From positions 635,106,558 to 635,170,557 of the forward strand of contig NC_133619.1 of NCBI RefSeq assembly GCF_048593235.1: a stretch of DNA of 64,000 nucleotides, read 5' to 3'. The position numbers and the translations under genes were made by a program. The number at the start of each line of letters is the position of its first letter. Position 1 is the stretch's first letter. The DNA is from Sminthopsis crassicaudata (Eukaryota). This document shows, one piece after another, positions 4,984-64,000 of the stretch. The notes under the pieces are model-generated. The model ran no database searches, had not been told where the DNA came from, and worked only from the letters and a program-made list of their open reading frames with translations.

Positions 4984-5945
4984 TCACTGGCTCCTGTCCC
5001 TTGGGGCCTTCCCTTCCCCATCTTTCCCACTGTCCCCCGGCTCCAGCTCCAGAAAGTTCTGGAAAAACTCCCGAGTGTTGAGATGCGGCTGCCAGAGCAG
5101 CAGGTAGCACTTGGGCAGGTAGAAGGTAATCAGGATCCCAAGGGCACAGAGCAAGATGGCGCCCATCTGCATGGCCGGCTGGTAGACCTTGGGCACGTTG
5201 GCGAGGAGCGGGATGAAGGAGATCCAGGTGATGAAGTAGGCCAGCATGGCAAAGGTGATGCCCCTGGCCAGGTTGTACCGCCCGGCCTGGCTCTGAACCA
5301 TGAAGGTGCCCAGGAAACAGAGGAAGGCCAGCGCCGCGTTGAGTATGTGCACCACACCAAAGCTGAACCAGGAGCTCACCTGGCAGTGCACCAGGGCCTC
5401 GCGGGGCAGCGTCTTCCAGTCCGTCACCATGCGCTGGGGGAAAGCCAACAGGTACCAGGTGCAGAGCGCACCCTCCACCAGCAGCAGAAGCACCATCAGC
5501 ACCCAGGCTCGGGGCCCGCGCAGCCAACTCCGGAGCCGCCCGGCCCCGCCCGGGAACTCCGAAGCCAGGAAGACCTCAGCTGCTCTGAGGAAGAGGGTGC
5601 CGAGGCAGCCGGTGAAGGGCAGGTGGAAGAGGGGCTGCTGAGCCAGGCAGCTGATATTGCTGGGCTGGCCGGGGAAATGCAAGACACTGAGGCACACCAG
5701 GAGCAGGCAGCCCAGGCCGAAGCAGCTGAGGCTTCCTCCCGAGGCCTGCACCACAGGCGAGCTCCGGCCGTGGCAGAAGAGCCCCAGAGCCGCCAGGCTT
5801 AGGCCCACCTCCAGCAGTAGCAGGAGGAGCAGGGCGACCACCACCGGCTCCCCCCAAGCCAAGAACCTGAGGGTCCGAGGAAAACACCGAGTGCTGAGAT
5901 CAGGAGACCACTGGTGCTCTTGGCAGCGGCTGCAGGTCAGGTCAT
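4984..5945 (-). CDS. TAS1R3: Taste receptor type 1 member 3, exon 6 (end of cysteine-rich domain plus 7TM)
   Basis: Acceptor ctccctccttacAG. Translation [34 protein letters not shown]...[23 protein letters not shown]...[12 protein letters not shown] at 4984-4986. Confidence 0.97.
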
Positions 5946-6750
5946 CTGTAAGGAGGGAGCGGAGGTGTGAGCTGGTTGGCGGCCCCCGAGGGAGCTCCCT
6001 GACCCCCCTCATTCCCTGGGCTTGACATACGGACACCCCAGCACCTGTTCTTCTAGATAACTGATGGAGGATGCAGAGGGGACCGGGAGCCAGATTCCCA
6101 GAGTCAGCCTCCAGAACCCACCTGACAATGTCACTCTTTTCAGAATCTCAGGGCTCTCTCCAGACTTCCAGGAGATTTCTCTAGAATATCCCCCAGGGGC
6201 CACCTGGTTTCCGCTTAGGCCCCAACACCTCTGATGGCGGCCCATTGCAATTCTGGATAGCCAAGGTTTTACTCAAATAGAGAAGTAAAGTAACAGAGCA
6301 CTGAGCTTAGAGCCAGTCATGGATTTGGATCCTGTGTCAGCCCCAGTCAACAAGCACTTATTAAGCACTTAGTGTGTGCCAGCACATAGCACATTAAGTT
6401 CTAAGGACACAAAAAGGAGCTTACATTCAAATAGGGAGAAAAACATTTAAAAAAATATGCAAAAACCAGCACATACAGACTAAATTGGAGGTCATTTAGT
6501 CACTAGCAAGGGAGGTCAGAAAAGTTCGATTTCTTCCTCTGGAAAATGGGGAAGTTGGATTCGGTGACCTCAAAGGTCCTGTGACTACAAAGCTTGGATG
6601 TTGATGTACAATGGACAGAGTGTTGAGTTTATGAAGATCTGAGTTCGAATGTGGCCTCAGACGTGTCCCAGCTGTGTGACTCTGGGCAAATCACTCAACC
6701 CGGTTTGCCTCAGTTCCCTCATTTGTACAAGGAGGATAGTGATGGAACCT

Positions 6751-11998: not shown

Positions 11999-12703
11999 GA
12001 GGCCCAATTTGAAATTAGGTCCTCCTGACTTCAGGCCGGTGCTCTATCCACTGCGCCACCTAGCTGCCCCCAATTTCCCTATTTGGTTCCTCTCTTTGCC
12101 ACAGCCCTTGAATGTGGGAGGCTGTTTTTTCTTCCTATTTGTACATACGCAGCATTTCCCCCACTTTCTTGCCAGCTCTGACCAGCAGCTCCCACCTAAC
12201 CTGGTCTCTCTGCCTCTGATTTCTCCCCTCTCCAATCCATCCTTCGCCAAAGTACTCTTTCTGGTGTGGGGGTCTGGCCAGATCGTTTCTGTCCCACAAA
12301 CCCAGTGGTTCCCTATCACTGCCATGATCAAATATTAAACGCCCACTGAACACTCTTCATTCATCTACTCCGCCCTCCCCATGACACAGAGCTTCCCTTC
12401 CCAAGCAAAGTGGCACTTCTGCTGCCTCTTAGAGATGACCCTCCATCTCTGGCCTCTGCTGGCCCCCTTTACCTGGAGTGACTTCCCTCCTCCCCTATTT
12501 CCTAGAGCCCTCAGTTTCCCTCAGAATTTCTGGAGGAAGTCTTGCTAATTTCCCCAGCTGCCAGGGCTCTCCCCCCTCCCGGGGATTGTATTTCTTTGGT
12601 ACTTTCATGCCGTCTCCCCCGTAGAAGGCAGGCTGCCGAGAAGACCGTAATTTCTGTTTCTCTCCACCCCCTGGCAAAGAGTTGGCCAGAGTGGGGTCCT
12701 CAC

Positions 12704-13489
12704 CTCCCAGGGCCGAGTGCCATTCTTGGAGAAGCACCCGGAGGCGTTGCAGCCCAGGGAGCGGTGGAGGGCGTGAGCCACGCTGTAGACGGCCGCATAG
12801 ACAGCGAAGGTTTGGTGGTGTTGCAGGCCTGCCGAGATGTTCTTGTGGCTGATGTGGTCACACTGCGGACACTGCGGCCCAATCACGTCCTCCTCGGACA
12901 GGGACGGAGTCTCCCCAAGGCTGTCACAGAAGGTCTGGTTGGCGGCCTGGCTCAGGCACCGGGCCACGTAGTCGTCGAACTCAGGCAGCGGGGAACCCTG
13001 CAGGAGGAACCCCAGGATGGTGCCCATTCTCCAGATGCCGGGCAGCTTGACGACCTCCTCAGACACCAGCCAGGCTTCGCTGGCCACCCACACCTTGGGC
13101 GTGACCTGGGTCTGGATGCAGTACTGGAAGAGGATGCGGGCAGCCGTCGCCGTGGAGAAGAGCACCACCACCTGTACTGCGCTCTGGTTGATCTGCCCCA
13201 GGATGTTGCCCACCTTGCCCAGGTCCTGGAGGTTCTGGGCCTTGGACAGCGGCAGGATGCCCTCGTGGGCCACACAGATGCTGCGGTTGTTGGCCAGGCT
13301 GGAGAAGATGTTGAGCCCCTGGCGGCCGTACTCGTCGTCGCTGCCCAAGGCTGCCACCCAGTTCCAGCCAAACAGGTTCAGCAGCTCCACTATGGCCTCC
13401 AGCTGCACCCGGTCACTGGGGATCGTCCGGAAGAAGGATGGGAACGTCTCCCGGTTGCTCAGCCGGTCAGTGCTGGCCCCGTAGCTGAC
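12704..13489 (-). CDS. TAS1R3: TAS1R3 exon 3 (Venus flytrap domain)
   Basis: ttttcccgcAG|GTCAGC...TGGGAG|GTGAGG; 786 bp; [29 protein letters not shown]...[18 protein letters not shown]...[14 protein letters not shown]. Confidence 0.97.
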
Positions 13490-14110
13490 CTGCGGGAAAA
13501 AGAGGCTGGACCAGGAGTGTGGCCGACGGGCCCACGGCCAAGGCTGGTTAGGAGAGTGGAAGCCCAAAGGCAGGGGATTGAAGATCTCAGGAGGAGAGGG
13601 GGGCTTTGGTGAATGGGGATGGGAGCCTCCATGGGGTGCTCAAAAAAGGGGATGGGGGGTTCTGAGGGGGATGAGGGCTCAACAAGGGGGGATGGGGGCC
13701 TCTGGGAGGGATAGGGGCTCAATAAGGGGGATGAGGGTCTCTGGGAGGGATGGGGGCTGGAGGGACAATGCAACATGGAACATGGAACATTTCCTAAGTG
13801 GGATTGGGGGTTTATGAGTGGGAGTAGGGACGAGAACTCAATGTAGGGTGGTCTCCATTTGGATAAACCCAGGCTGTTTCCCGCCTTAACATTTAAGCTG
13901 CCCAAGCTTAGGAGGTAAAGCTGCTATTTGACACCAAGGCCTGGTTTTGTTCCCATGTCCAGGGGCTGTTTCTGGTGTTCTTCCCCCTCCTCCCCCAAGG
14001 CACTGCAGGAGACAGAAAGGTGACTCCCTGCCTGAGAGCAGGTTTGGGTCTGCAAGGAGCTGGGAAGGGAACTTGAATCAGCACCTGGCCCCACTCCCCG
14101 GCTCCCGTAC

Positions 14111-54490: not shown

Positions 54491-55905
54491 GGGCTCCAGA
54501 ACGCAGCCCACTGCAGCTGCCTTGGCTTAGGTACTCCAGAGCTAAAATGAAAAGCAGCTCTCCGAGAACAACTGAAGGAGAGCCAGCTGCAACCATGAGC
54601 TAGAAGAGCACCCACAAAAGCCAACCCTTACTGCCCCATCTTGCCTCAGGTCACAGAATGTGGTGGTAGTTGTGTGGAAGCTGAATCATGTTTTAATGTT
54701 CTTTGAGGTCTTAATTTCCCAGAATGGCGGTAGCACAGGAGGACTGACCTCAGTGGTCAATGTCCACCCCATCCTTCCTCCTCTCAGACCAAACCAGACG
54801 TGACCCCGCTGCCAGGGGTCCCACCCAGGGCAGCCCCTTTGCTTTCCTTGGCAGGAGGCTAACGTCTCCCATTGCTAGGAAGTTTTTACCATCTCAAGTC
54901 TAAATCTGTCTCCTTACCATCAACTGGTGGTAGTTTTTGGTTCTGGCCCCTGGGGTACAGTGCTTCAAGGCAGCCCCCATGGCCTCCCGGAGGCTTCTTT
55001 CCTGTTGTAAAATGTCTCCTTGGGCCTCGCAAATAACTCTTAACTTTTCTCTTTTTCCCCCTTTTTAAATTTCTTTTTTTTAAATTTTTTATTATACACA
55101 TACCAAATTCTTAATTTTTAAAAATACACATTTTTTTTTATTTAGAATTTTTTTCCACGGTATATATGCATGAGCAATTTTTTTTTATAACATTATCCCT
55201 TGTATTCATTTTTTCCAAATTATCCCCCCCCTTCCTCCCACTCCCTCCCCCCGATGACAGGTAATCCCATACATTTTACATGTAAAATACACATTTCTTT
55301 GTGAATCACGTTGGGAACTTTTGTAAATGACGTCTGTATCAGTGTTAAAGAGCCTCTTTCTGCCAAATGCTGAACAGAGCTCCTGTCCTTATTCCCAAAG
55401 AACTCCCAGTTCGAGAATGAGGTAATGACGCATGTGGAGGACATAGCATTATGGAACCTCAAACCTTGGGCACAGATGCCCAGGAGGAGGGAGGGGATGC
55501 CCCACCAGGACTGGGGAAGGAAGGAGGGGAGAAAATCGTAGGGAAATATCCTGGCAGCACCTGCGAGGTGCTGGAGGCTGGCTCAGGGGCTCTGTGGTCT
55601 TGGTCCAAGGCTGTTGAGGTTACCGTGAGTCATGACAGGGGGATGGAGGAGGTGGAAGAGAGCAGGAACCATTTTTTCTTTTCCCTTTAAAACGTTGGCT
55701 GCACTTCTGAGGAGAGTGCTCCGCTAGGGGATGAAGGCATTTCTGTGGCAGGTTGCTTTCTGGCAGGCCCGAATCGCCAGCTGTGGCAGGGAGTGAAGCT
55801 TGGGTTCAGGCCTGCCTGGTGTCTGTGCCAGCTACCTGTGCTGCCCGCCCCTGCCTCCCTTCTGTCACAGCCTGCGGGATAAAAGCCGGCCTCTTCCCTC
55901 CGTAG

Positions 55906-56004
55906 GTGGACGACGAGTTGGAAATCAAGGCCTACTATGCGGGCCACGTGCTGGGTGCTGCCATGTTCCAGATCAAAGTTGGCTCTGAATCTGCCGTTTA
56001 CACA
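55906..56004 (+). CDS. INTS11: INTS11 exon 5
   Basis: ccgtAG|GTGGAC...TACACA|GTAAGG; 99 bp; [33 protein letters not shown]. Confidence 0.96.
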
Positions 56005-56126
56005 GTAAGGCGCCCGGCCTCCCGGGAGCACGGGGGAGGTGCTTTGGGGAAGTGGGAAGAGGGTGGGCAGAGATGAACTTTAAATGGAAGGCTGATGGCT
56101 GCTTTCCTCTGGCTCTCTCTGGCTAG

Positions 56127-56161
56127 GGCGATTATAACATGACTCCGGACCGGCACTTGGG
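56127..56161 (+). CDS. INTS11: INTS11 exon 6
   Basis: ggctAG|GGCGAT...TTGGG|GTGAGT; 35 bp; GDYNMTPDRHLG. Confidence 0.95.
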
Positions 56162-56995
56162 GTGAGTGGGACGGTGAGCTTCTGCTCGAGTGGGGGGGGG
56201 GGGGTTTGTCTTTATGCTTTTCACACGGGGGATTCGCAGCCAGGATGCCGATTAACCTGCGAGGGTGTGGGTGGCTGCTCGATGTTCCTGCCTCCATGAC
56301 TGCTTAGAACAGCCTGCATCGGGGGCGCATCTGCGAGCTCCTCTCACTTGGAAGTCTGTGCCAGTCAGGATCGATACCTCCCCTCCCTCCACGCCCGCGG
56401 CCCGCAAAGTGAGAGTGGCCACCTTCAGTTAGCTGCCTCAGGAGTGCGGGGCAGATGGGATGGGGGCGCGTCCCTTCTACCTTCCCTCTGTCTTTGGGGC
56501 CATTTGATTTTGACTTCTCCCAGGAGGCTTCATTGGCTAAGCCTGTCTCCTTGGGGAACAATGGGTTAAAAAGATTGAGAGGGACTTGGAGGGTCTTAGG
56601 TGCTCAAGGGGACCCCACGGCCATTGAATCCCACCTCATTTTTCAGAGGAGGAAGCTGAGGCAGACAGGTGAAGTCCGGGCTACAAATAGGAAGTTCTGA
56701 AGTGGGATTTGCCCAAGTCTTCCTGACTCTAGGTCCAGGGCTCTCTCCACTATGTCTCATCAGAAGGGGTTCGGGGGGCCAGAAACGTGACTTTCTTGCA
56801 TCACTGCCCATGTTGAAAGGGGATCAGCGTTGCCCAGAGAGTCCGGCAGATGGGCCTTCCTGGCCCGGGAGCTTGGGGTGGAGGCCAGAGCCTCCTGGCG
56901 ACTGCTAGAAGGGCCACGGCGGCCCTCGGGGCAGACCAGGGCGGCTCTGGCCCTGGCACTGAGCTTCATGGCGGGTGTCCTGCCTTGCCTCACAG

Positions 56996-57134
56996 GGCTG
57001 CCTGGATCGATAAGTGCCGGCCCAACCTGCTCATCACCGAGTCCACTTACGCCACGACCATCCGAGACTCCAAGCGCTGCCGGGAGAGGGACTTCCTGAA
57101 GAAAGTCCACGAGACGGTGGAGAGGGGAGGAAAG
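56996..57134 (+). CDS. INTS11: INTS11 exon 7
   Basis: ctcacAG|GGCTGCC...GGAAAG|GTGAGC; 139 bp; [46 protein letters not shown]. Confidence 0.97.
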
Positions 57135-58398
57135 GTGAGCGAGCAGGACAAGGACCGGAGCCCTGGGGCTTCACCCCTGGGACCTGGGAGGCTGGCAGCG
57201 TGAGCATTTATTAAGTGCTTGCTGCATACAGGTGCTGTGCACACCAGGAAAACTCCCTGCCCTCAGGGACATTCTATCTTAATTGGGGCAAGAGAGCACA
57301 AGAAAGGGAGAGGAGGGCAGAAAGGGCGTGCAGACTTGTGGGGAGATTCTTCTTGTGGGGAGGTTCGTGTGGTCAATGCTTGGGGGCTCCTTGGGCATCC
57401 AGCCCCGCTATGGGGTGGGATGTTAAGTGGGGGAGGCTGCCCTGTTCAGGGAGTAGCCAGGAGGCCTGCTCAGGCTCTGCCCATTTGTCTCTTCTCTCCG
57501 GCCCAGTCCATGCTCCCCTCTCTGCCGGGGTGATTTTCCTAAGGAGCGGGTCCATCCTGTCATTCCTCTGCTTGGTGCACTCCAGGGGCCCCCTGTTCCA
57601 TTCAGGAGCAATACCAAGCCCGTTGTTCGGCATCCAAGGCTCTTCCAGCTTGGCCCCTTTCCGCCAGTGCAGGCTTACATTCTGCTCCTCTACCCAGACT
57701 TTATGACACAGTCTCTTGCCCACATTTGCTCTTCCTCTTGCCGTCCACGTCCCTGCTCGTCCTCCGCCCCGGCCGCCCTTCGTTCCTGGAGCGCCCTCCC
57801 TCCTGGCGGCCTCGGAACCGTGGCTTCTGTTAACCCGGCTCAGTGGCCACGGTTCTGTGTTCCGGTTCCCCTGTGTTGCTTTGGCTGCCAGGCTGAAGCC
57901 CGGCCAGGGCAGGAACCATGTCCCCCTTTTCTCCGAGCTCTTGGTACAGCTCAGGCTCCGTTCTTGTTGATTCATGCACAGATGATGTCCCAGCTTGGCC
58001 TTCAGAGGGCCAGGGCAGCGAACCAGGGCCCCTGAGGCCCAGCTCTGGCTCCCCCGCAGTTTAGAGAGGGGGAAACTGAGGCTTGAGACCAGGACTGCCA
58101 GCCAAGCCCGTGTCCCCCCACAGCGCGCTCTTCAGCTGATGCTGAATTAGGAAAGGCAGCCAGGGAGAAGCTCAGAGAGGGGTCGGCCTTCTGGGGGAAA
58201 GGTTATGGCTCCTTAGCCCTGGGCACGTGTGAGATCCGGTCCGGGAGGCGGCGGCCCCAGCTGCCGTTTCCCTCCTTCCTGAGGTGGTTGGAGCAGGAGA
58301 TGGCTGGGGAGAAGGGGAGGGACCCTGCAGGGCCCTGGAAAGGCGAGGGCTGAGGCTGCTGCGCGCTGACACTTCTGGGCCCTGGCCTCCCTCTGCAG

Positions 58399-58463
58399 GT
58401 CCTCATCCCCGTGTTTGCGCTGGGCCGGGCTCAGGAGCTCTGCATCCTGCTGGAAACGTTTTG
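58399..58463 (+). CDS. INTS11: INTS11 exon 8
   Basis: ctctgcAG|GTCCTC...TTTTG|GTGAGT; 65 bp; [22 protein letters not shown]. Confidence 0.96.
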
Positions 58464-58784
58464 GTGAGTCTGCTGTCCTTGGGCATGGGGAAGAGAGATC
58501 CCTGGAGGGCGGGTGCCCTGGCACAGACCTCAGGGCGGGGAAAGTGCCTGAGGACCGGTCCGTGGGCACAGGAGCACCTGCCTCTGGTTCCCTTGGCTGC
58601 TGCTGAGGGTGGATGGGACGGTGGGGAGCTGAAGAACCCCCTTCTGAGCTGCTGGCTGGGGCGGAGCTAGGGCCTCCCCTTGTTGTTGGCCCCCTCCCTC
58701 ACACACGTGATCCCCCGGGGCCTGCAGGAGGCTGACAGGGAGAATGGGGGCCAGGCCCTCACTGCCTCCCTTCCTTTCCCAAAG

Positions 58785-58974
58785 GGAAAGAATGAACCTG
58801 AAAGCCCCCATCTACTTCTCCACGGGCTTGACGGAGAAGGCCAATCACTACTACAAGCTCTTCATCACCTGGACCAACCAGAAGATCCGGAAGACATTTG
58901 TGCAGAGAAACATGTTTGAGTTCAAGCACATCAAGGCTTTCGACCGAGCTTTTGCCGACAACCCCGGGCCGATG
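58785..58974 (+). CDS. INTS11: INTS11 exon 9
   Basis: tttcccaaAG|GGAAAG...CCGATG|GTAGGG; 190 bp; [38 protein letters not shown]...DNPGPM. Confidence 0.97.
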
Positions 58975-59289
58975 GTAGGGGAGACGGGCCTTGTCCGGCC
59001 AAGGCAGGGGAGGAGGGGGCTGGTCGAGCCTGGACCCCCAGGGCTCCCAGAGGAGGTGCCGGTCAGGAGGAAGACGGGAACATCCCGGCACGCGCCCAAA
59101 CGGCGTTTCCTGCTCGGGGCCTGCACCCCTTTCTGGACATCAGGGTTTGGGGCCTTGTCTGGTGGGGGAGCCTTTGGGGAGATGAGGGCATCGGGCCCTG
59201 GTCCGCCTTCTGTGTCCACCCCGTAGAGCGGTGGCTAATGGTGGGTCCTTGGCATTGCCGCCACTGCCCTGTCTCCTTTCTCCACCCAG

Positions 59290-59373
59290 GTTGTCTTTGC
59301 CACCCCGGGCATGCTGCACGCTGGGCAGTCCCTGCAGATCTTCAGGAAATGGGCCGGAAACGAGAAGAACATG
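59290..59373 (+). CDS. INTS11: INTS11 exon 10
   Basis: cacccAG|GTTGTC...AACATG|GTAGGG; 84 bp; [28 protein letters not shown]. Confidence 0.96.
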
Positions 59374-59740
59374 GTAGGGGGGCGGCCCTGGCCAGGTGCC
59401 CTGAGCGGGAACCATCTTCCCTCGCTGGTCCCCGTTATTTAAGGAGGATAAAAGGATGGGGCAGGGACAGCTATCCTCCCCCTGTGGGGAGGAGTCTAGT
59501 GTGGGGTGGGAGCTGAGGATGGCGTCTTCCTCCTCAAGGGGATCAGGCCTTAGTGCCCTGTCCTGGCACCGCCTGGTCTACCTGCCCCCCAGCCAGCTTT
59601 CTTCCAAGGAGGAGGGAGGGGAGACCATCCCCAGCCATTTCCCGTGGGGTCTCCCTGGCTCCTCGCTTGGGGCGGGGGGGTGCCCTGCACCTGCCCTTCC
59701 TGCATGGGGCGGTGGGCCCACACCCACTCTCTGCTTGCAG

Positions 59741-59830
59741 GTCATCATGCCGGGCTACTGTGTGCAGGGGACCGTGGGCCACAAGATTCTGAGCGGGCAG
59801 CGGAAGCTGGAGATGGAGGGGAGGCAGATC
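59741..59830 (+). CDS. INTS11: INTS11 exon 11
   Basis: cttgcAG|GTCATC...CAGATC|GTAAGT; 90 bp; [30 protein letters not shown]. Confidence 0.97.
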
Positions 59831-60810
59831 GTAAGTCCCTGGCGTGTGGGATGGGGGAGGAGCCCCCCCCAGACTGGTCAGATGCCCTCAGGATGCCGAC
59901 CAACTCGGGCTCTGGGGTCTTGGTTTCCTCCTCTGTAAGATGTGGGCGCTCAGGGACCTCCTCGGAGCCGATCAGGGGGTCTCTCCCCACCACATCTGAA
60001 ATCCTGGGCGGGGAAGTGACTTGACCTTGGTCATCTTCTGTCATTCACTGTCAAAAGAAGGGGCAGGGTCTAGAGCTCTGGAGCCCGGCCCATCCCCATC
60101 CTTCAGAAGGAGGAATGGAAGTTCAGGGGTTATCTGTCCAGGGTCACCCAGGTCCTGAGCCCAAGGCTTTGGTTTGTGCTGGTGAAAAGCTGGTCTTGTG
60201 GGAGGGTCAGAGGCCGAGAGCCCGGAGGCCTGGCAGGGCGGCCATGGGGCATCCCTCAGAGGGACGGACAGCCGCCACCTGCAGACCCCAGCGGGGCCCG
60301 GGGCACCTCCTGCTCCCCTGGGGGTGGAAGCAGGAGCAGGGCTGGTCCCTCACCAGCCCTCTGTGCAAAGGCACTGGCCCCCATCTGCAGAGGGCTCCCC
60401 TCCAGTGCCACACGGAAGGTGCCGTGCCCTGTGCCCATGGCCACATGAGCCTGGGTCCCTTCTGGAGCCCGAGGGGCTGGGCAGAGGCCGGGGCAGCCCT
60501 GAGTCCTCACAGAGAGCCTGGCTTGGCCCTTAGCGCTTCTGTGATGGCTGCTTGTAATCCCCATTTCACAGATGAGGAAACTAAGGCTAAGGGGAGGGAC
60601 TTGCCCAGTGCCACTTAACTGCTAACAGAGTCAGGGTTTGAACCCAGCCGGGTCTTTCTGATGTGTCCGGGGCTCTTACAGCGCGCTGCTTCACTGGAGG
60701 GGGGTGGGAGAGGGGGGAATGGCAGCTGGGACTGGTGGCGACTTCTGTCTCTCTGCCTCCCTCTCTCCCTCCGTCCGTCCGATCTCCGTGTGTCTCTTCG
60801 TCCCCCCCAG

Positions 60811-60973
60811 CTCGAGGTGAAGATGCAGGTGGAGTACATGTCCTTCAGTGCCCACGCCGACGCCAAGGGCATCATGCAGCTGGTCCGCCAGGCGGAGCCG
60901 GACAACGTGCTGCTCGTCCACGGGGAAGCCAAGAAGATGGAGTTCCTGAAGCAGAAGATTGAGCAGGAATTCC
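60811..60973 (+). CDS. INTS11: INTS11 exon 12
   Basis: ccccccAG|CTCGAG...TTCC|GTGCGT; 163 bp; [25 protein letters not shown]...[20 protein letters not shown]. Confidence 0.96.
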
Positions 60974-61299
60974 GTGCGTGGCCAGGCCTGGGGGCGGGGG
61001 AGTCCCTGGGGAGCACTCCTCAGCCTGGGGGCAGAGGGATGGTGCCGGCCCAGCCTGGCAGGAGGTGCCTGGGGTGGGGGGGGGGTCAGAGACTCTGGGC
61101 TCTACAGTGGTTTCTAGTCAGTTTGGCTATTGACGTGCCCCCCTTGGCCTTGGGAGGGGGGCGTCGGCCCCGGGGGCCTGAGGAGCGGGTGCCGGGCAGA
61201 GCTCGGAGCAGCGTGGGCCAGGGGAGGCCGGGGGAGGCCGGGGAATCTGGGCCGCCGCTGCCCGGCCCAGACTTAACTGTCACGTGCTGCCTTTGTCAG

Positions 61300-61407
61300 A
61301 TGTGAACTGCTACATGCCGGCCAACGGAGAGACGGTCACCCTGCTCACCCACCCCAACATCCCTGTGGGCATCTCGCTGGGCCTGCTGAAGAGGGAGATG
61401 GCGCTGG
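61300..61407 (+). CDS. INTS11: INTS11 exon 13
   Basis: tttgtcAG|ATGTGA...CTGG|GTACTG; 108 bp; [36 protein letters not shown]. Confidence 0.95.
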
Positions 61408-61520
61408 GTACTGCCCTGGGAGGGGGCCGGGGGGGCCAGAATCTGGGCTGCCTAATGGGGGGTGGGGAGGGGGGAAGCAAGGGTTCTGGTGGGTGAGGGT
61501 CTCCTCCTCTTCCTCCCCAG

Positions 61521-61582
61521 GCCTCCTCCCCGACGCCAAGAGGCCCAAGCTGATGCATGGCACGCTGATCATGAAGGACAAT
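61521..61582 (+). CDS. INTS11: INTS11 exon 14
   Basis: ctccccAG|GCCTCC...GACAAT|GTGAGT; 62 bp; LLPDAKRPKLMHGTLIMKDN. Confidence 0.96.
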
Positions 61583-61724
61583 GTGAGTGGCCTCTCTGAG
61601 CCGGCTGGCAGGGACTCAGGGAGCTCCGGGATGGGGGGGCCTTCTGGTCACCTGGGGGGGCTGGGCGAGGCTCTGGGCCCCCCCCAGAGATCCTGACCTC
61701 TGACGCTCCGTCCCCTCCCCCCAG

Positions 61725-61867
61725 AATTTCCGGCTGGTGTCCTCGGAGCAGGCCCTCAAGGAGCTGGGCCTGGCTGAGCACCAGCTCCGCTTCACCTGCC
61801 GCGTGCACATTCACGACACGCGCAAGGAGCAGGAGACGGTCCTGCGCGTGTACAGCCACCTGAAGAA
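61725..61867 (+). CDS. INTS11: INTS11 exon 15
   Basis: cccccAG|AATTTC...AAGAA|GTAAGG; 143 bp; [47 protein letters not shown]. Confidence 0.96.
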
Positions 61868-61972
61868 GTAAGGGGGACCCCTCCCTTCCCGGGGAGCCCT
61901 TGGGATACCACTCCCCTCCCCCCAGGGTCCAGTAACCGCAGCCCTGCAGCCGGCCCCTCCTCTCCCCCTCAG

Positions 61973-62102
61973 TGTTCTGAAAGCGCACTCGGTCCAGCAC
62001 CTGCCCGATGGCTCGGTCATGGTGGAGTCCATCCTCATCCAGGCCACGGCGCACTCGGAGGACCCGGGCACCAAAGTCCTGCTGGTCTCCTGGACCTACC
62101 AG
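61973..62102 (+). CDS. INTS11: INTS11 exon 16
   Basis: ccctcAG|TGTTCT...TACCAG|GTGAGA; 130 bp; [43 protein letters not shown]. Confidence 0.96.
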
Positions 62103-62131
62103 GTGAGAGCCTGTGGGGCAGCCCGGGGCCT

Positions 62132-62193
62132 GGGGGATGTGGGGGCGGCCCCGGGGGATGTGGGGGCGGCCCCGGGGGATGTGGCGGCGGCCC
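62132..62193. repeat. 21-bp G-rich tandem repeat x3 in the last INTS11 intron
   Basis: gggggatgtgggggcggcccc units at 62132, 62153 and 62174. Confidence 0.9.
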
Positions 62194-62232
62194 GGGGGAA
62201 GCCCTCACCTCCTCCTCCACCTTGGCCCGCAG

Positions 62233-62298
62233 GATGAAGAGTTGGGCAGCTACCTCACGTCGCTGCTGAAAAAGGGGCTCCCGCAGGCCCCCAGCTGA
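62233..62298 (+). CDS. INTS11: INTS11 exon 17 (last coding)
   Basis: cccgcAG|GATGAA; [21 protein letters not shown]. The 17 exons total 1803 bp = 600 aa plus stop. Confidence 0.97.
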
Positions 62299-62562
62299 GG
62301 CCCTTCCTGCTGCACCGGGGGTCTTGGTCTGGCTGCTCCAGGGAGGCCTGGGCCTCTGCCTGGAGCAGGGGATGAGGCTCCGGGCCCCCCGCCCCACGGC
62401 CTTCTGGGCCAGGCTGACTCCTCTTCGCCTTGGGTGGGGCTCTCTGGGTCTGGGCCGGTTCGGTTCTGGGGGGGCAGAGACTTTTGTAGCCCGGGGCCAG
62501 CTCCCCTCCCTCCCAAGTGCCTGGAACGGGGCTGGGTCCCCGGCCCCCCTCTAAGGACAAGA

Positions 62563-62568
62563 ATTAAA
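62563..62568 (+). terminator. INTS11: INTS11 polyadenylation signal (ATTAAA)
   Basis: Only hexamer of this kind after the stop, followed by a U-rich tract (ctgccttttattc). Confidence 0.65.
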
Positions 62569-62597
62569 CAAAAAGTCGCTCAACAGCTTCTCTGCCT

Positions 62598-62603
62598 TTT
62601 ATT
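62598..62603 (-). terminator. GPCR polyadenylation signal (AATAAA)
   Basis: tttatt on + strand about 200 nt downstream of the GPCR stop codon. Confidence 0.65.
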
Positions 62604-62798
62604 CACCTGGAGCAACAGGTCTCGGGCCTTGGCACATGTAGTTGGCACTGGAGGATGGCAGGGCCCCCTCCCCCCCACAGTCAGCCTCTCCAGAGCAGCA
62701 GTCCGCAAGCTGGCTCCTTGGGGAGGGACGTGCCCCCCGTGCCTGGCTCAGTGTGGGGGCGCTGCCCTCCCCCCAGGCCTGCTGCAGCCTAAGGGGTC

Positions 62799-63758
62799 TC
62801 ACCCCAGCGGGGGGCAGAGGGGCCCCGTCAGCTTGCTGTCACAGATGGTGAAGACGGCCTTGGGCCTGGGGGAGCGGAGGCGAGCCCAGAGCCGGCAGCA
62901 GGCCCGGGGCCCTCCGGGCAGGCCGACGAGGGGGCTGAGGCAGGGGCCCAGGCTGAGCAGCAGCAGTGCCGCCCGGCGCAGGTGGCTGAGGCCGGGGCCG
63001 GGGCCGCCGAGGTGGCGCAGCAGGTGGCAGAGGGAGTAGGGCAGGAAGCAGATGGCGCACACGAGCACGCTGAAGCCGAGGGTCCTGAGGGCTCTGCGGC
63101 CACGCCAGGTCCTGTGGCCAGAGGCCACGTGCCAGGCCAGCAGCGGGTAGCCGCTCAGGATGATGATGGAAGGCGCCAGGAAGCCCCCCACCAGGGCGTA
63201 GGTGCCGTGGGACCCGGAGACTGTGTCTGCCACAAAGTTCTCAAAGCAGGAGGTACGGTTGTTGGGTCCGGTGTGACTCAGGGGGCTGCCCAGGGCCAGG
63301 GGACTGGCCACAGCCCCGGCTAACAGCCAGAGTCCTGCGCTGCCCACGGCCCAGTGGGTCCTGCCAGACCGGAGGCGCGCCCAGGGGTGGGCCAGGGCCA
63401 GGTAGCTGTCCAGGCTGAGGCAGAGGAGCGAGCCGGTGCCAAGGTACATGAAGGCCCAGTGGAGGCTGGCACTGAGGCGGCAGGCCGGCTCCCCGAAGCG
63501 CCAGTCGCCCCCGTGCAGGTGGTAGTGCACCCAGAGCGGCAGGCTGCAGGCGAAGGCGGCGGCGGCCAGCGCCAGGCTCAGCCGCAGCACGCAGGCCGGC
63601 CCCGAGCGCCTCAGCCGCCAGAGGAGGCGGCTCCCGACCGCCACGTTCTCGGCCAGGCCCAGAGCAAAGACCACGCCGTAGGCCACGGCCAGCTGCTGAT
63701 GGCCCCCAAACCCGGTGGCCGAGGGGCTTCCCGTGTCATTCGGGGCCGGCGGCGGCAT
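62799..63758 (-). CDS. Orphan class A GPCR, LPAR6/P2Y-like, 319 aa, with degenerate activation motifs
   Basis: Seven hydrophobic segments. YGVVFALGLAEN (TM1), SLP (TM2), WRFGEPAC (ECL1/TM3), LCLSLDSYLALAHP (TM3), NRTSCFENF (ECL2), GFLAP (TM5), CFLPY (TM6). gccATG Kozak context; acceptor ccctcctcAG 12 nt upstream of ATG. Confidence 0.88.
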   Translation of the reverse strand: MPPPAPNDTGSPSATGFGGHQQLAVAYGVVFALGLAENVAVGSRLLWRLRRSGPACVLRLSLALAAAAFACSLPLWVHYHLHGGDWRFGEPACRLSASLHWAFMYLGTGSLLCLSLDSYLALAHPWARLRSGRTHWAVGSAGLWLLAGAVASPLALGSPLSHTGPNNRTSCFENFVADTVSGSHGTYALVGGFLAPSIIILSGYPLLAWHVASGHRTWRGRRALRTLGFSVLVCAICFLPYSLCHLLRHLGGPGPGLSHLRRAALLLLSLGPCLSPLVGLPGGPRACCRLWARLRSPRPKAVFTICDSKLTGPLCPPLG

Positions 63759-63943
63759 GGCCGGGCCAGTCTGAGGAGGGCGGAAGGAGCGAGTGCTCAG
63801 CGCCGTCAGTCAGGCCCCTGGCCGCACCCTCATCCCAGGGCCCCTCGGGTCTGAGTGGCCGGCAGAGGCCCAGGAGGAACACGGCTGCCTGCTTCTAAGA
63901 GAGGAGGCCTGCCATGGCCCCCTGCCCCCAGACCCCTACTCAC

Positions 63944-64000
63944 AGGAGCCGCTGAGCACCTGCTGCCGGCCTCTGAGCCACAGGAAACTTCAGCCTCAGA
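63944..64000 (-). other. Probable upstream exon of the GPCR transcript (runs off window)
   Basis: Donor CT|GTGAGT at 63944/63943 and acceptor at 63771-63772 define a 173-bp intron. Confidence 0.5.

What the first reader, a model, noticed from the sequence alone, without database searches (positions are those of the whole stretch)
62799..63758. Intact orphan LPAR6/P2Y-like GPCR at a position where human has no GPCR
Seen: an uninterrupted 319-codon 7TM ORF with N-glycosylation sites (NDT, NRT), the TM3-ECL2 cysteine pair, the LPAR4/6-type ECL2 motif CFENF, a Kozak ATG, a splice acceptor and an AATAAA. Known (recall): human INTS11 abuts PUSL1 tail-to-tail with no receptor between them. Inference: an ancestral lipid/nucleotide-receptor-like gene retained in marsupials and lost in at least some eutherians, with no known ligand, lying about 46 kb from TAS1R3.
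Basis: partly seen in the sequence, partly recalled or inferred. Interest (0 to 1): 0.82.

Follow-up and report, generated by a model that had tools for sequence, protein, structure and literature searches.

The report
Switch-less orphan GPCR kept in marsupials
The open reading frame is a real receptor gene under purifying selection, lying between PUSL1 and INTS11 from fish to birds and not found in placental mammals, and its marsupial version has lost nearly every residue that such receptors use to switch on.

Summary
The 319-codon minus-strand ORF at 62799-63758 is intact and is a rhodopsin-class GPCR (Pfam 7tm_1, E=4e-31).

**Orthology.** It is the marsupial orthologue of an unnamed vertebrate receptor. 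That receptor sits after PUSL1 and tail-to-tail with INTS11 in six other marsupials and two birds. It is also tail-to-tail with INTS11 in a teleost. Orthologues occur widely in ray-finned fish, amphibians, reptiles and birds. No eutherian or monotreme member appeared in any search.

**Family.** The group is its own clade (100/100 support). It is not LPAR6, P2Y, GPR4 or PAR.

**Selection.** The gene is not decaying. Codon-model omega is 0.26. Omega=1 is rejected for the tree (p=8e-30) and for the window's own branch (p=5e-8).

On a very long marsupial stem branch the receptor lost D2.50, R3.50, N7.45, D7.49 and Y7.53. All other members keep these residues. The changes fall mainly in the cytoplasmic half, and the new residues are conserved among marsupials. 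This suggests an atypical receptor that does not signal in the canonical way.

**Limits.** Transcription is only weakly shown, because read laying failed. The eutherian loss rests on absence from searches plus recall of the human locus. The same stretch was noted once before in this scan (s1-170965).

The parts
62799..63758 (-). Single-exon coding sequence of the receptor, 319 codons plus a TGA stop (62801-62799). The ATG is at 63758-63756.
   Evidence: ORF list. Pfam 7tm_1 E=4.3e-31. 78% nucleotide identity to the koala and Dromiciops orthologous ORFs while the flanks do not align. Omega 0.26. AlphaFold2 gives 7 TM helices plus helix 8, pLDDT 84.
62598..62603 (-). Candidate polyadenylation signal AATAAA, 196 nt after the stop. 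Its use is not shown.
   Evidence: Read directly. No read-level evidence.
63771..63790 (-). Candidate 3' splice site: pyrimidine tract then AG at 63772-63771, 12 nt upstream of the ATG. Its use is not shown.
   Evidence: Sequence. A Petaurus gene model (P0015) joins PUSL1 in frame to the receptor exon 13 codons upstream of its ATG, and a Logan contig shows an AG acceptor about 45 nt upstream. The window's site does not obviously align with those.
63938..63943 (-). Candidate 5' splice site GTGAGT at the window's edge. It could end an upstream non-coding or PUSL1-derived exon. Unverified.
   Evidence: Sequence only.
62195..62300 (+). Last coding exon of the convergent neighbour INTS11 (context only). 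Further INTS11 exons run back to about 55400.
   Evidence: blastn blocks against the koala and Dromiciops INTS11 gene models, 84-86% identity. Pfam IntS11_C and Beta-Casp on those models.
62563..62568 (+). Candidate INTS11 poly(A) signal ATTAAA. It would place the two genes' 3' ends within a few tens of bases of each other.
   Evidence: Read. Inference only.

Best explanation
**Shown.** The ORF is a protein-coding gene under purifying selection. It is the marsupial orthologue of an unnamed class A GPCR of the P2Y / LPA / PAR / GPR4 neighbourhood. That receptor has sat next to INTS11, and in tetrapods between PUSL1 and INTS11, since before ray-finned fish and tetrapods split. No eutherian or monotreme member was found.

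On the branch leading to living marsupials the protein changed about ten times more than on the sauropsid stem. It lost N2.45, D2.50, R3.50, H6.52, N7.45, D7.49, Y7.53 and Y7.54. It kept the fold markers N1.50, the TM3-ECL2 disulfide, W4.50, P5.50, Y5.58, CFLP in TM6 and P7.50. It also kept much of the extracellular half, including the glycosylated CFENF hairpin. The replacements are concentrated in the cytoplasmic half and have been conserved among marsupials since.

**Inferred.** The protein still folds as a 7TM receptor and probably still binds a ligand from outside. It cannot use the canonical sodium-pocket / DRY / NPxxY route to activate G proteins. It therefore most likely acts as an atypical receptor. 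It may be a binder or scavenger, a partner of another receptor, or a receptor coupled to a different cytoplasmic partner through its remodelled but conserved inner face. The ligand is unknown.
For: - Intact ORF and 7tm_1 match.
- Orthologues at 60-68% identity in koala, Trichosurus, wombat, Dromiciops, bilby, Gracilinanus and Petaurus, plus a Logan contig.
- Conserved gene order PUSL1 > GPCR > < INTS11 in six marsupials and two birds, and GPCR > < INTS11 in a teleost.
- IQ-TREE: family 100/100, marsupials 100/100 with a stem of 1.76 changes per site against 0.17 for the sauropsid stem.
- Motif table: only the marsupial sequences lack the switch residues. Fish, caecilian, sauropsid and sister-clade sequences keep them.
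- GY94 maximum likelihood on four marsupial coding sequences: omega 0.264, omega=1 rejected (LRT 128.6, p=8e-30). The window branch has omega 0.27, and omega=1 is rejected for it (LRT 29.9, p=4.6e-8).
- Only the ORF, not its flanks, aligns between the window and koala or Dromiciops.
- The ancestral residue is kept at 45 of 64 conserved extracellular-half positions against 26 of 56 cytoplasmic-half positions (Fisher p=0.0095). Within-marsupial conservation is 0.82 in both halves.
- Omega is 0.25 for the outer half and 0.27 for the inner half.
- AlphaFold2 model with 7 TM helices and helix 8, pLDDT 84, pTM 0.78.
Against: - No function, ligand or surface expression was tested.
- Transcription is only indirectly supported. 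RNA-labelled runs hold the stretch, and two of them (X3, X10) hold none of an INTS11 intron. Strand is unknown, and read-through from INTS11 (antisense) or PUSL1 (sense) could explain the signal. The one read-laying run failed.
- The codon test uses only four sequences with unequal GC3 (0.73-0.91), which violates the model's stationarity assumption.
- Omega of about 0.26 is relaxed compared with many GPCRs, although birds give 0.30-0.36 for the same gene.
- The split into outer and inner halves rests on a predicted model.
- Some GPCRs with altered DRY motifs still signal, so loss of canonical coupling is an inference from established class A mechanism, not a result.
Confidence: 0.65

Rival explanations
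1. This is a decaying relic: an ORF that stays open only because 70% GC DNA has few stop codons, with no selected protein function.
For: The region is 70% GC and many spurious ORFs of 60-200 aa occur in all frames. All canonical activation residues are gone. The window branch is the longest among marsupials. The C-terminal end is unstable: TGA in the window, TAG in a Logan contig, TAC with a 40-50 aa extension in koala.
Against: Omega=1 is rejected for the tree (p=8e-30) and for the window branch alone (p=4.6e-8). The frame is open in at least nine marsupial sequences spanning didelphids and australidelphians, and every indel is a multiple of three. The replaced residues are themselves about 80% conserved among marsupials. 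The flanks have diverged beyond blastn detection while the ORF is 78% identical.
Confidence: 0.05
2. This is a conventional G-protein-coupled receptor that still signals normally for a lipid, nucleotide or proton ligand, as its fish and bird orthologues presumably do. The motif changes would be compensated elsewhere.
For: It keeps Y5.58, P5.50, CFLP, P7.50, a basic ICL3 and a conserved cytoplasmic half under omega 0.27. Its nearest solved relatives are ordinary signalling receptors such as GPR4, PAR2 and GPR68.
Against: D2.50, R3.50, N7.45, D7.49 and Y7.53 are lost together. By established class A mechanism these form the sodium pocket, the G-protein-contacting arginine and the TM7 activation tyrosine. 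I know of no signalling class A receptor that lacks all of them (from knowledge, not tested). The cytoplasmic half was preferentially rewritten.
Confidence: 0.15
3. The exon works mainly as an alternative 3' end of PUSL1, either as a PUSL1-receptor fusion protein or as a read-through transcript, and not as an independent receptor gene.
For: A Petaurus model (P0015, 629 aa) joins PUSL1 in frame to the receptor 13 codons before its ATG. A Trachemys receptor protein is filed as a PUSL1 isoform. The window has an acceptor-like site 12 nt before the ATG with an open frame between the two.
Against: Six other marsupial annotations call a separate gene. In the window an in-frame stop lies 17 codons upstream, and the start codon and N-terminal glycosylation site are conserved. 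A cytosolic or mitochondrial enzyme fused to the extracellular N-terminus of a 7TM protein is topologically awkward (inference). Shared transcription with PUSL1 is compatible with the best explanation.
Confidence: 0.1

Closest known systems
The unnamed vertebrate 'LPAR6-like' receptor next to INTS11. Automatic names include LPAR6(-like), LPAR4, P2RY1 and GPR17 in fish, and 'LPAR6 protein' in birds.
   Same: Same genomic position. One clade with 100/100 support. Shared CFENF hairpin, TM3-ECL2 cysteines, the IHYHL..DW motif after TM2, CFLPY in TM6 and a (V/I)(Y/F)TI motif in the tail.
   Different: Only 32-37% identity. The non-marsupial members keep D2.50, DRY, H6.52 and (D/N)PxxYY, and the marsupial proteins do not. 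I found no paper that characterises any member. Whether zebrafish lpar6b belongs to this family could not be settled.
LPAR6 (P2Y5) and the P2Y / LPA4-6 group
   Same: Same branch of class A. Human LPAR6 carries the same CFENF motif in ECL2. The fish orthologue's best solved match is LPAR6 (E=1.6e-47).
   Different: That score is barely better than P2Y1, GPR17, PAFR, P2Y2 or GPR4. The window protein scores LPAR6 at only 4e-16, against 5e-23 for GPR4. LPAR6 is absent from the 30 best Swiss-Prot fold matches. The genomic position differs, because LPAR6 lies inside RB1 (from knowledge).
Proton-sensing receptors GPR4 / GPR68
   Same: Best sequence matches of the window protein among solved structures, at about 30% identity, including the PLWV.Y.LH..W.G..C.L stretch and CFE.F.
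   Different: The alignment stops before TM7. A lamprey GPR4-like protein does not group with the family in the tree. GPR4 keeps DRY and signals.
Atypical, non-G-protein receptors such as ACKR1-4, C5aR2 and CCRL2 (from knowledge)
   Same: Class A fold kept, DRY-region arginine altered or lost, and retained under selection. This is what the marsupial protein most likely works like.
   Different: They are not related by descent. They belong to the chemokine / complement branch and mostly keep D2.50 and NPxxY. Here the sodium-pocket residues and the TM7 tyrosine are gone as well. Function is untested.

Membership tests
Class A (rhodopsin-family) GPCR | Significant match to the 7tm_1 profile and seven predicted transmembrane helices plus helix 8 | tested here: met
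   Pfam 7tm_1 E=4.3e-31. AlphaFold2 gives 7 TM helices and H8, pLDDT 84, pTM 0.78. Foldseek TM-scores of 0.73-0.78 to many class A receptors.
Class A (rhodopsin-family) GPCR | Structural landmarks N1.50, TM3-ECL2 disulfide, W4.50, P5.50, P6.50, P7.50 | tested here: met
   All are present in the window protein and conserved in the family.
Class A (rhodopsin-family) GPCR | Activation microswitches D2.50, D/E-R-Y (R3.50) and N/D-P-x-x-Y (Y7.53) | tested here: not met
   The window has A at 2.50, DSY at 3.49-3.51 and SPLVG at 7.49-7.53. All marsupial sequences lack them and all non-marsupial members keep them. The protein is a class A member by descent and fold, but not a canonical one.
LPAR6 orthologue | Closest relative is LPAR6, clearly above other receptors | tested here: not met
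   LPAR6 scores E=4e-16 against GPR4 at 5e-23 for the window protein. For the fish orthologue LPAR6, P2Y1, GPR17 and PAFR are nearly tied. The family forms a separate 100/100 clade.
LPAR6 orthologue | Genomic position inside RB1 (from knowledge) | tested here: not met
   The gene lies between PUSL1 and INTS11 in every locus fetched.
Unnamed PUSL1-INTS11 receptor family of vertebrates | Position tail-to-tail with INTS11, downstream of PUSL1 | tested here: met
   In the window, INTS11 exons end at about 62300 on the + strand and the ORF ends at 62799 on the - strand. Orthologous loci in six marsupials, two birds and one teleost show the same order. PUSL1 itself lies outside the window.
Unnamed PUSL1-INTS11 receptor family of vertebrates | Monophyly with fish, amphibian and sauropsid members against named paralogues | tested here: met
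   100/100 support, with P2RY1, CYSLTR1, PAFR, GPR17-like, LPAR5-like, GPR4-like and PAR2-like sequences outside.
Processed or unitary pseudogene | Stops, frameshifts, or omega not different from 1 | tested here: not met
   The frame is open. Omega is 0.264 and omega=1 is rejected at p=8e-30, and at p=4.6e-8 on the window branch.
Atypical (non-G-protein) receptor | Ligand binding without G-protein activation | not testable with these tools
   Only the sequence correlate, loss of R3.50 and other switches, was seen.
Expressed gene | Sense-strand, polyadenylated transcript | tested here: inconclusive
   14 RNA-labelled runs hold 66-92% of the words of 62560-63900. Many also hold an INTS11 intron, but X3 and X10 hold none of it.

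The most novel reading that the evidence does not exclude
A class A receptor lost its whole canonical activation machinery on the mammalian or marsupial stem. Marsupials then kept it for some 80 million years under purifying selection with a rewritten, conserved cytoplasmic face, which would be a receptor scaffold re-purposed for a non-G-protein role. Eutherians discarded the gene altogether. If so, the loss in eutherians and the remodelling in marsupials would be two outcomes of a single loss of the ancestral signalling function.
Probability: 0.4. Interest if true: 0.7.

Novelty: new variant of a known kind. Interest (0 to 1): 0.55.

Why it matters
This work defines a vertebrate-wide orphan receptor family with no human counterpart. 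Automatic annotation scatters the family under at least eight different names. The work also shows that the marsupial branch of the family is a natural experiment: the fold, the glycosylated ligand-facing half and the reading frame are kept under selection, while the sodium pocket, the DRY arginine and the NPxxY tyrosine are all gone. That makes a concrete question testable, namely what a class A scaffold is selected for when it cannot switch in the usual way. It also offers matched canonical (bird, turtle, fish) and switch-less (marsupial) orthologues for side-by-side assays. For genome annotation, it argues that these models should share one name and should not be called LPAR6, GPR68, GPR183, PAR4 or P2RY2.

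Tried and rejected
- **Read laying.** Depth, strand and splice junctions could therefore not be seen.
- **Second run search as a control.** It showed that most RNA-labelled holders also hold an INTS11 intron, so they are not clean evidence of a mature transcript. Only X3 and X10 separate the two.
- **Missing DNA.** DNA for Trichosurus, wombat, bilby, Gracilinanus and Petaurus could not be fetched. The codon test therefore has four taxa.
- **Literature.** Searches for the family under 'lysophosphatidic acid receptor 6-like', PUSL1+INTS11+GPCR and opossum GPCR repertoire found nothing that describes it.
- **Zebrafish lpar6b.** I tried to decide whether it is the fish member of this family. The papers and their supplement give no sequence, identity or position.
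- **NG86 pairwise estimates.** These suggested a higher omega on the window lineage. I rejected that because YN00 and the maximum-likelihood branch model give the same omega as elsewhere. The long branch reflects a higher overall rate with GC3 of 0.91.
- **Stem-branch test.** I did not test positive selection against relaxation on the stem, because synonymous sites are saturated against bird and fish outgroups.
- **Logan contig L005.** It is collinear with koala genomic DNA, so it says nothing about splicing.

Full report
**Observation.** The minus strand of 62799-63758 carries one uninterrupted ORF of 319 codons, from an ATG to a TGA. It matches the rhodopsin-family profile 7tm_1 with E=4.3e-31 over residues 38-277. 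The region is 70% GC and full of meaningless ORFs of up to 201 aa in other frames, so length alone would prove little. The profile match and what follows do.

- NDT and NRT sequons.
- The TM3 and ECL2 cysteines, invariant in the family.
- CFENF in ECL2.
- A purine at -3 of the ATG.
- A pyrimidine tract plus AG 12 nt upstream of the ATG.
- AATAAA 196 nt after the stop.

An in-frame stop lies 17 codons upstream of the ATG. TAS1R3 exons lie at 4984-6036 and 12605-13567 on the minus strand.

**What it is related to.** Among solved structures the best sequence matches are:

| Receptor | E-value |
|---|---|
| GPR4 | 5e-23 |
| PAR2 | 9e-23 |
| GPR68 | 5e-22 |
| Apelin receptor, GPR17, CysLT2 | next in rank |
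| LPAR6 | 4e-16 |

A predicted structure (pLDDT 84, pTM 0.78, seven helices plus helix 8) matches GPR183, GPR17, PAR1, GPR4, GPR68, CysLT2, P2Y2 and P2RY8 about equally. Identities are 19-26%, and LPAR6 is not among the best 30. So the protein belongs to the P2Y / LPA / PAR / GPR4 neighbourhood of class A but to none of its named members.

**Orthologues and gene order.** The large protein collection holds proteins 60-68% identical from koala, brushtail possum, wombat, monito del monte, bilby and a gracile opossum. It also holds a sugar-glider model and an unnamed Logan contig. Their automatic names disagree: GPR68-like, GPR183-like, PAR4-like, LPAR6-like, P2RY2-like.

In all six species whose loci could be looked up, the gene lies after PUSL1 on the same strand and tail-to-tail with INTS11. 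In the window the last INTS11 coding exon ends near 62300 on the plus strand, and the receptor ORF ends at 62799 on the minus strand. PUSL1 would lie beyond base 64000.

More distant relatives (32-37% identity) occur in well over a hundred ray-finned fishes, including gar and bowfin. A search with a bird member found about a hundred birds, turtles, a gharial, lizards and a caecilian. Cluster look-ups added a frog.

The arowana gene is tail-to-tail with INTS11. The guineafowl and black-swan genes lie between PUSL1 and INTS11, with CPTP beyond. One turtle protein of this family is even filed as a PUSL1 isoform.

A careful tree gives these results:
- Fish, caecilian plus sauropsids, and marsupials form one clade with 100/100 support.
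- Its sister is a second unnamed group from catshark, turtles, newt and sturgeon (names).
- P2RY1, CYSLTR1, PAFR, GPR17-like, LPAR5-like, lamprey GPR4-like and PAR2-like sequences fall outside (names).

No eutherian or monotreme protein appeared in the family in any of four searches. The collection does hold eutherian and echidna proteins for the neighbouring P2RY1 cluster. From memory, human PUSL1 and INTS11 overlap at their 3' ends, which leaves no room for a gene. I could not test this here.

**Is it alive?** I made a codon alignment of the window, koala, Dromiciops and the Logan contig (318 codons, every indel a multiple of three). I fitted a GY94-F3x4 model on it with my own script.

| Test | Result |
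|---|---|
| Single omega | 0.264 |
| Omega=1, whole tree | rejected, LRT 128.6, p=8e-30 |
| Omega, window's terminal branch | 0.27 |
| Window branch against the rest | no difference, p=0.92 |
| Omega=1, window branch | rejected, LRT 29.9, p=4.6e-8 |

Pairwise YN00 values are 0.25-0.33.

The window's branch is the longest, and its coding sequence has GC3 of 0.91. Both synonymous and non-synonymous rates are raised, so this is not relaxation.

Between the window and koala or Dromiciops, blastn aligns only the ORF (78%) and the INTS11 exons. It does not align the flanks or introns. For comparison, two birds give omega 0.30-0.36 for the same gene. The family as a whole therefore evolves fairly fast, and the marsupial copies are no less constrained today. 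The pseudogene reading is rejected.

**The unusual part.** The motif table shows which residues changed.

Every non-marsupial member, and the sister clade, has:
- N2.45 and D2.50.
- DRY.
- H6.52.
- N7.45.
- (D/N)PxxYY in TM7.

Every marsupial sequence, including the didelphids, has instead:
- S at 2.45 and A/T/G at 2.50.
- DSY, DSC, DRC or DCH at the DRY position.
- S at 6.52 and G or S at 7.45.
- SPxx(C/G)L in TM7.

The window protein reads A at 2.50, DSY, and SPLVG. The marsupial sequences keep N1.50, the disulfide cysteines, W4.50, P5.50, Y5.58, CFLPY and P7.50.

The branch leading to marsupials is 1.76 changes per site, against 0.17 for the sauropsid stem. I split the protein into outer and inner halves using the predicted helices. 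At positions at least 80% conserved in non-marsupials, the marsupial consensus keeps the ancestral residue at 45 of 64 outer positions but only 26 of 56 inner ones (Fisher p=0.0095). Conservation among marsupials is 0.82 in both halves, and the replaced positions are themselves about 80% conserved. Omega within marsupials is 0.25 for the outer half and 0.27 for the inner half.

The cytoplasmic and core half was therefore preferentially rewritten before the marsupial radiation and has been held since. Another first-stage note on the same stretch (s1-170965) had flagged the switch loss. I had seen the loss independently, and I extend that note with the comparative data.

**How it most likely works.** The following steps are inferred, not shown. 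D2.50, N7.45 and N7.49 line the sodium and water pocket. R3.50 contacts the G-protein alpha subunit. Y7.53 moves on activation. This is established class A mechanism. A protein lacking all of them is unlikely to activate G proteins in the usual way.

Several features point to a receptor that still reaches the surface and binds something. The glycosylated N-terminus, the ECL2 hairpin, the TM3 and TM7 arginines near the pocket entrance and the conserved (V/I)(Y/F)TI tail motif are all retained.

Selection on the rewritten inner face and on the basic ICL3 argues for some cytoplasmic partner, against a purely passive decoy. I put about 0.5 on an atypical, non-canonical receptor (scavenger, co-receptor or alternative coupling). 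I put 0.15 on ordinary signalling, 0.1 on a role mainly as a PUSL1 alternative 3' exon or fusion, and 0.05 on a relic.

**Transcription.** This is the weak point.
- Fourteen RNA-labelled runs of the organism hold 66-92% of the sampled words of 62560-63900.
- A control with an INTS11 intron shows that many of the same runs hold that too, so they contain pre-mRNA or DNA.
- Two runs from two studies, X3 and X10, hold the receptor stretch (0.81 and 0.70) and none of the intron. One run, X19, shows the reverse.
- That pattern fits a separate transcript. However, the strand is unknown, and read-through from the convergent INTS11 or from PUSL1 is not excluded.
- The Petaurus model that splices PUSL1 in frame into the receptor exon, and the candidate acceptor and donor in the window, suggest shared transcription with PUSL1. 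This remains to be tested.

**Other details.** The stop codon position is unstable. It is TGA in the window, TAG at the same codon in the Logan contig, and TAC in koala followed by 44 more residues that do not align to the window. The tail beyond residue 319 is therefore dispensable.

Human LPAR6 does share the CFENF motif and GPR4 has CFEKF, so the motif marks the neighbourhood and not a single receptor.

I could not decide whether zebrafish lpar6b, which has been knocked out together with lpar6a, is the fish member of this family. No fish member seen here carries a '6b' name.

**Verdict.** The locus is more interesting for the selected, switch-less state of the marsupial protein than for its mere presence.

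Automatic annotation already predicts the gene in other marsupials. I found no paper that describes the family or this state. I rate it a new variant of a known kind, with interest 0.55.

Noticed in passing
window 4984-6036 (-) and 12605-13567 (-): TAS1R3-type exons: 7tm_3 (E=5.6e-52) and ANF_receptor (E=4.4e-42). They lie 49-57 kb from the receptor ORF.
   Followed up: partly
window 55387-62300 (+): INTS11 exons were mapped by similarity to koala and Dromiciops. Two unusually long conserved blocks (55387-56375 and 56463-57162, 72-75% over 0.7-1 kb) partly overlap an interspersed repeat that also hits at about 4250, 8050, 22600 and 37800.
   Followed up: no
window 62799-62801; L005 about 1412-1414; L001 about 10958: The receptor's stop codon differs by lineage at the same codon: TGA in the window, TAG in a Logan contig, TAC in koala. 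This gives tails of 0 or 40-50 extra, unconserved residues.
   Followed up: partly
P0015 (Petaurus), P0205 (Trachemys): Gene models tie the receptor to PUSL1. One is a 629-aa in-frame PUSL1-receptor fusion in the sugar glider. The other is a stand-alone turtle receptor filed as a PUSL1 isoform.
   Followed up: partly
P0244, P0245/P0388, P0247, P0271: A second unnamed 'LPAR6-like' clade in catshark, turtles, newts and sturgeon is sister to the family. It has canonical motifs and also no obvious mammalian member.
   Followed up: partly
P0069/P0112 (Platichthys), P0084/P0089 (Hippoglossus): Flatfish carry two family members on the same contig, apparently tandem duplicates. Several fish and frog models of 650-850 aa look like fused tandem copies.
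   Followed up: no
window 62799-63758: GC3 of the window's coding sequence is 0.91, against 0.73-0.84 in three other marsupials. The terminal branch is about twice as long at the same omega, which suggests GC-biased conversion or a locally raised mutation rate.
   Followed up: partly
This says nothing about the biology.
   Followed up: no
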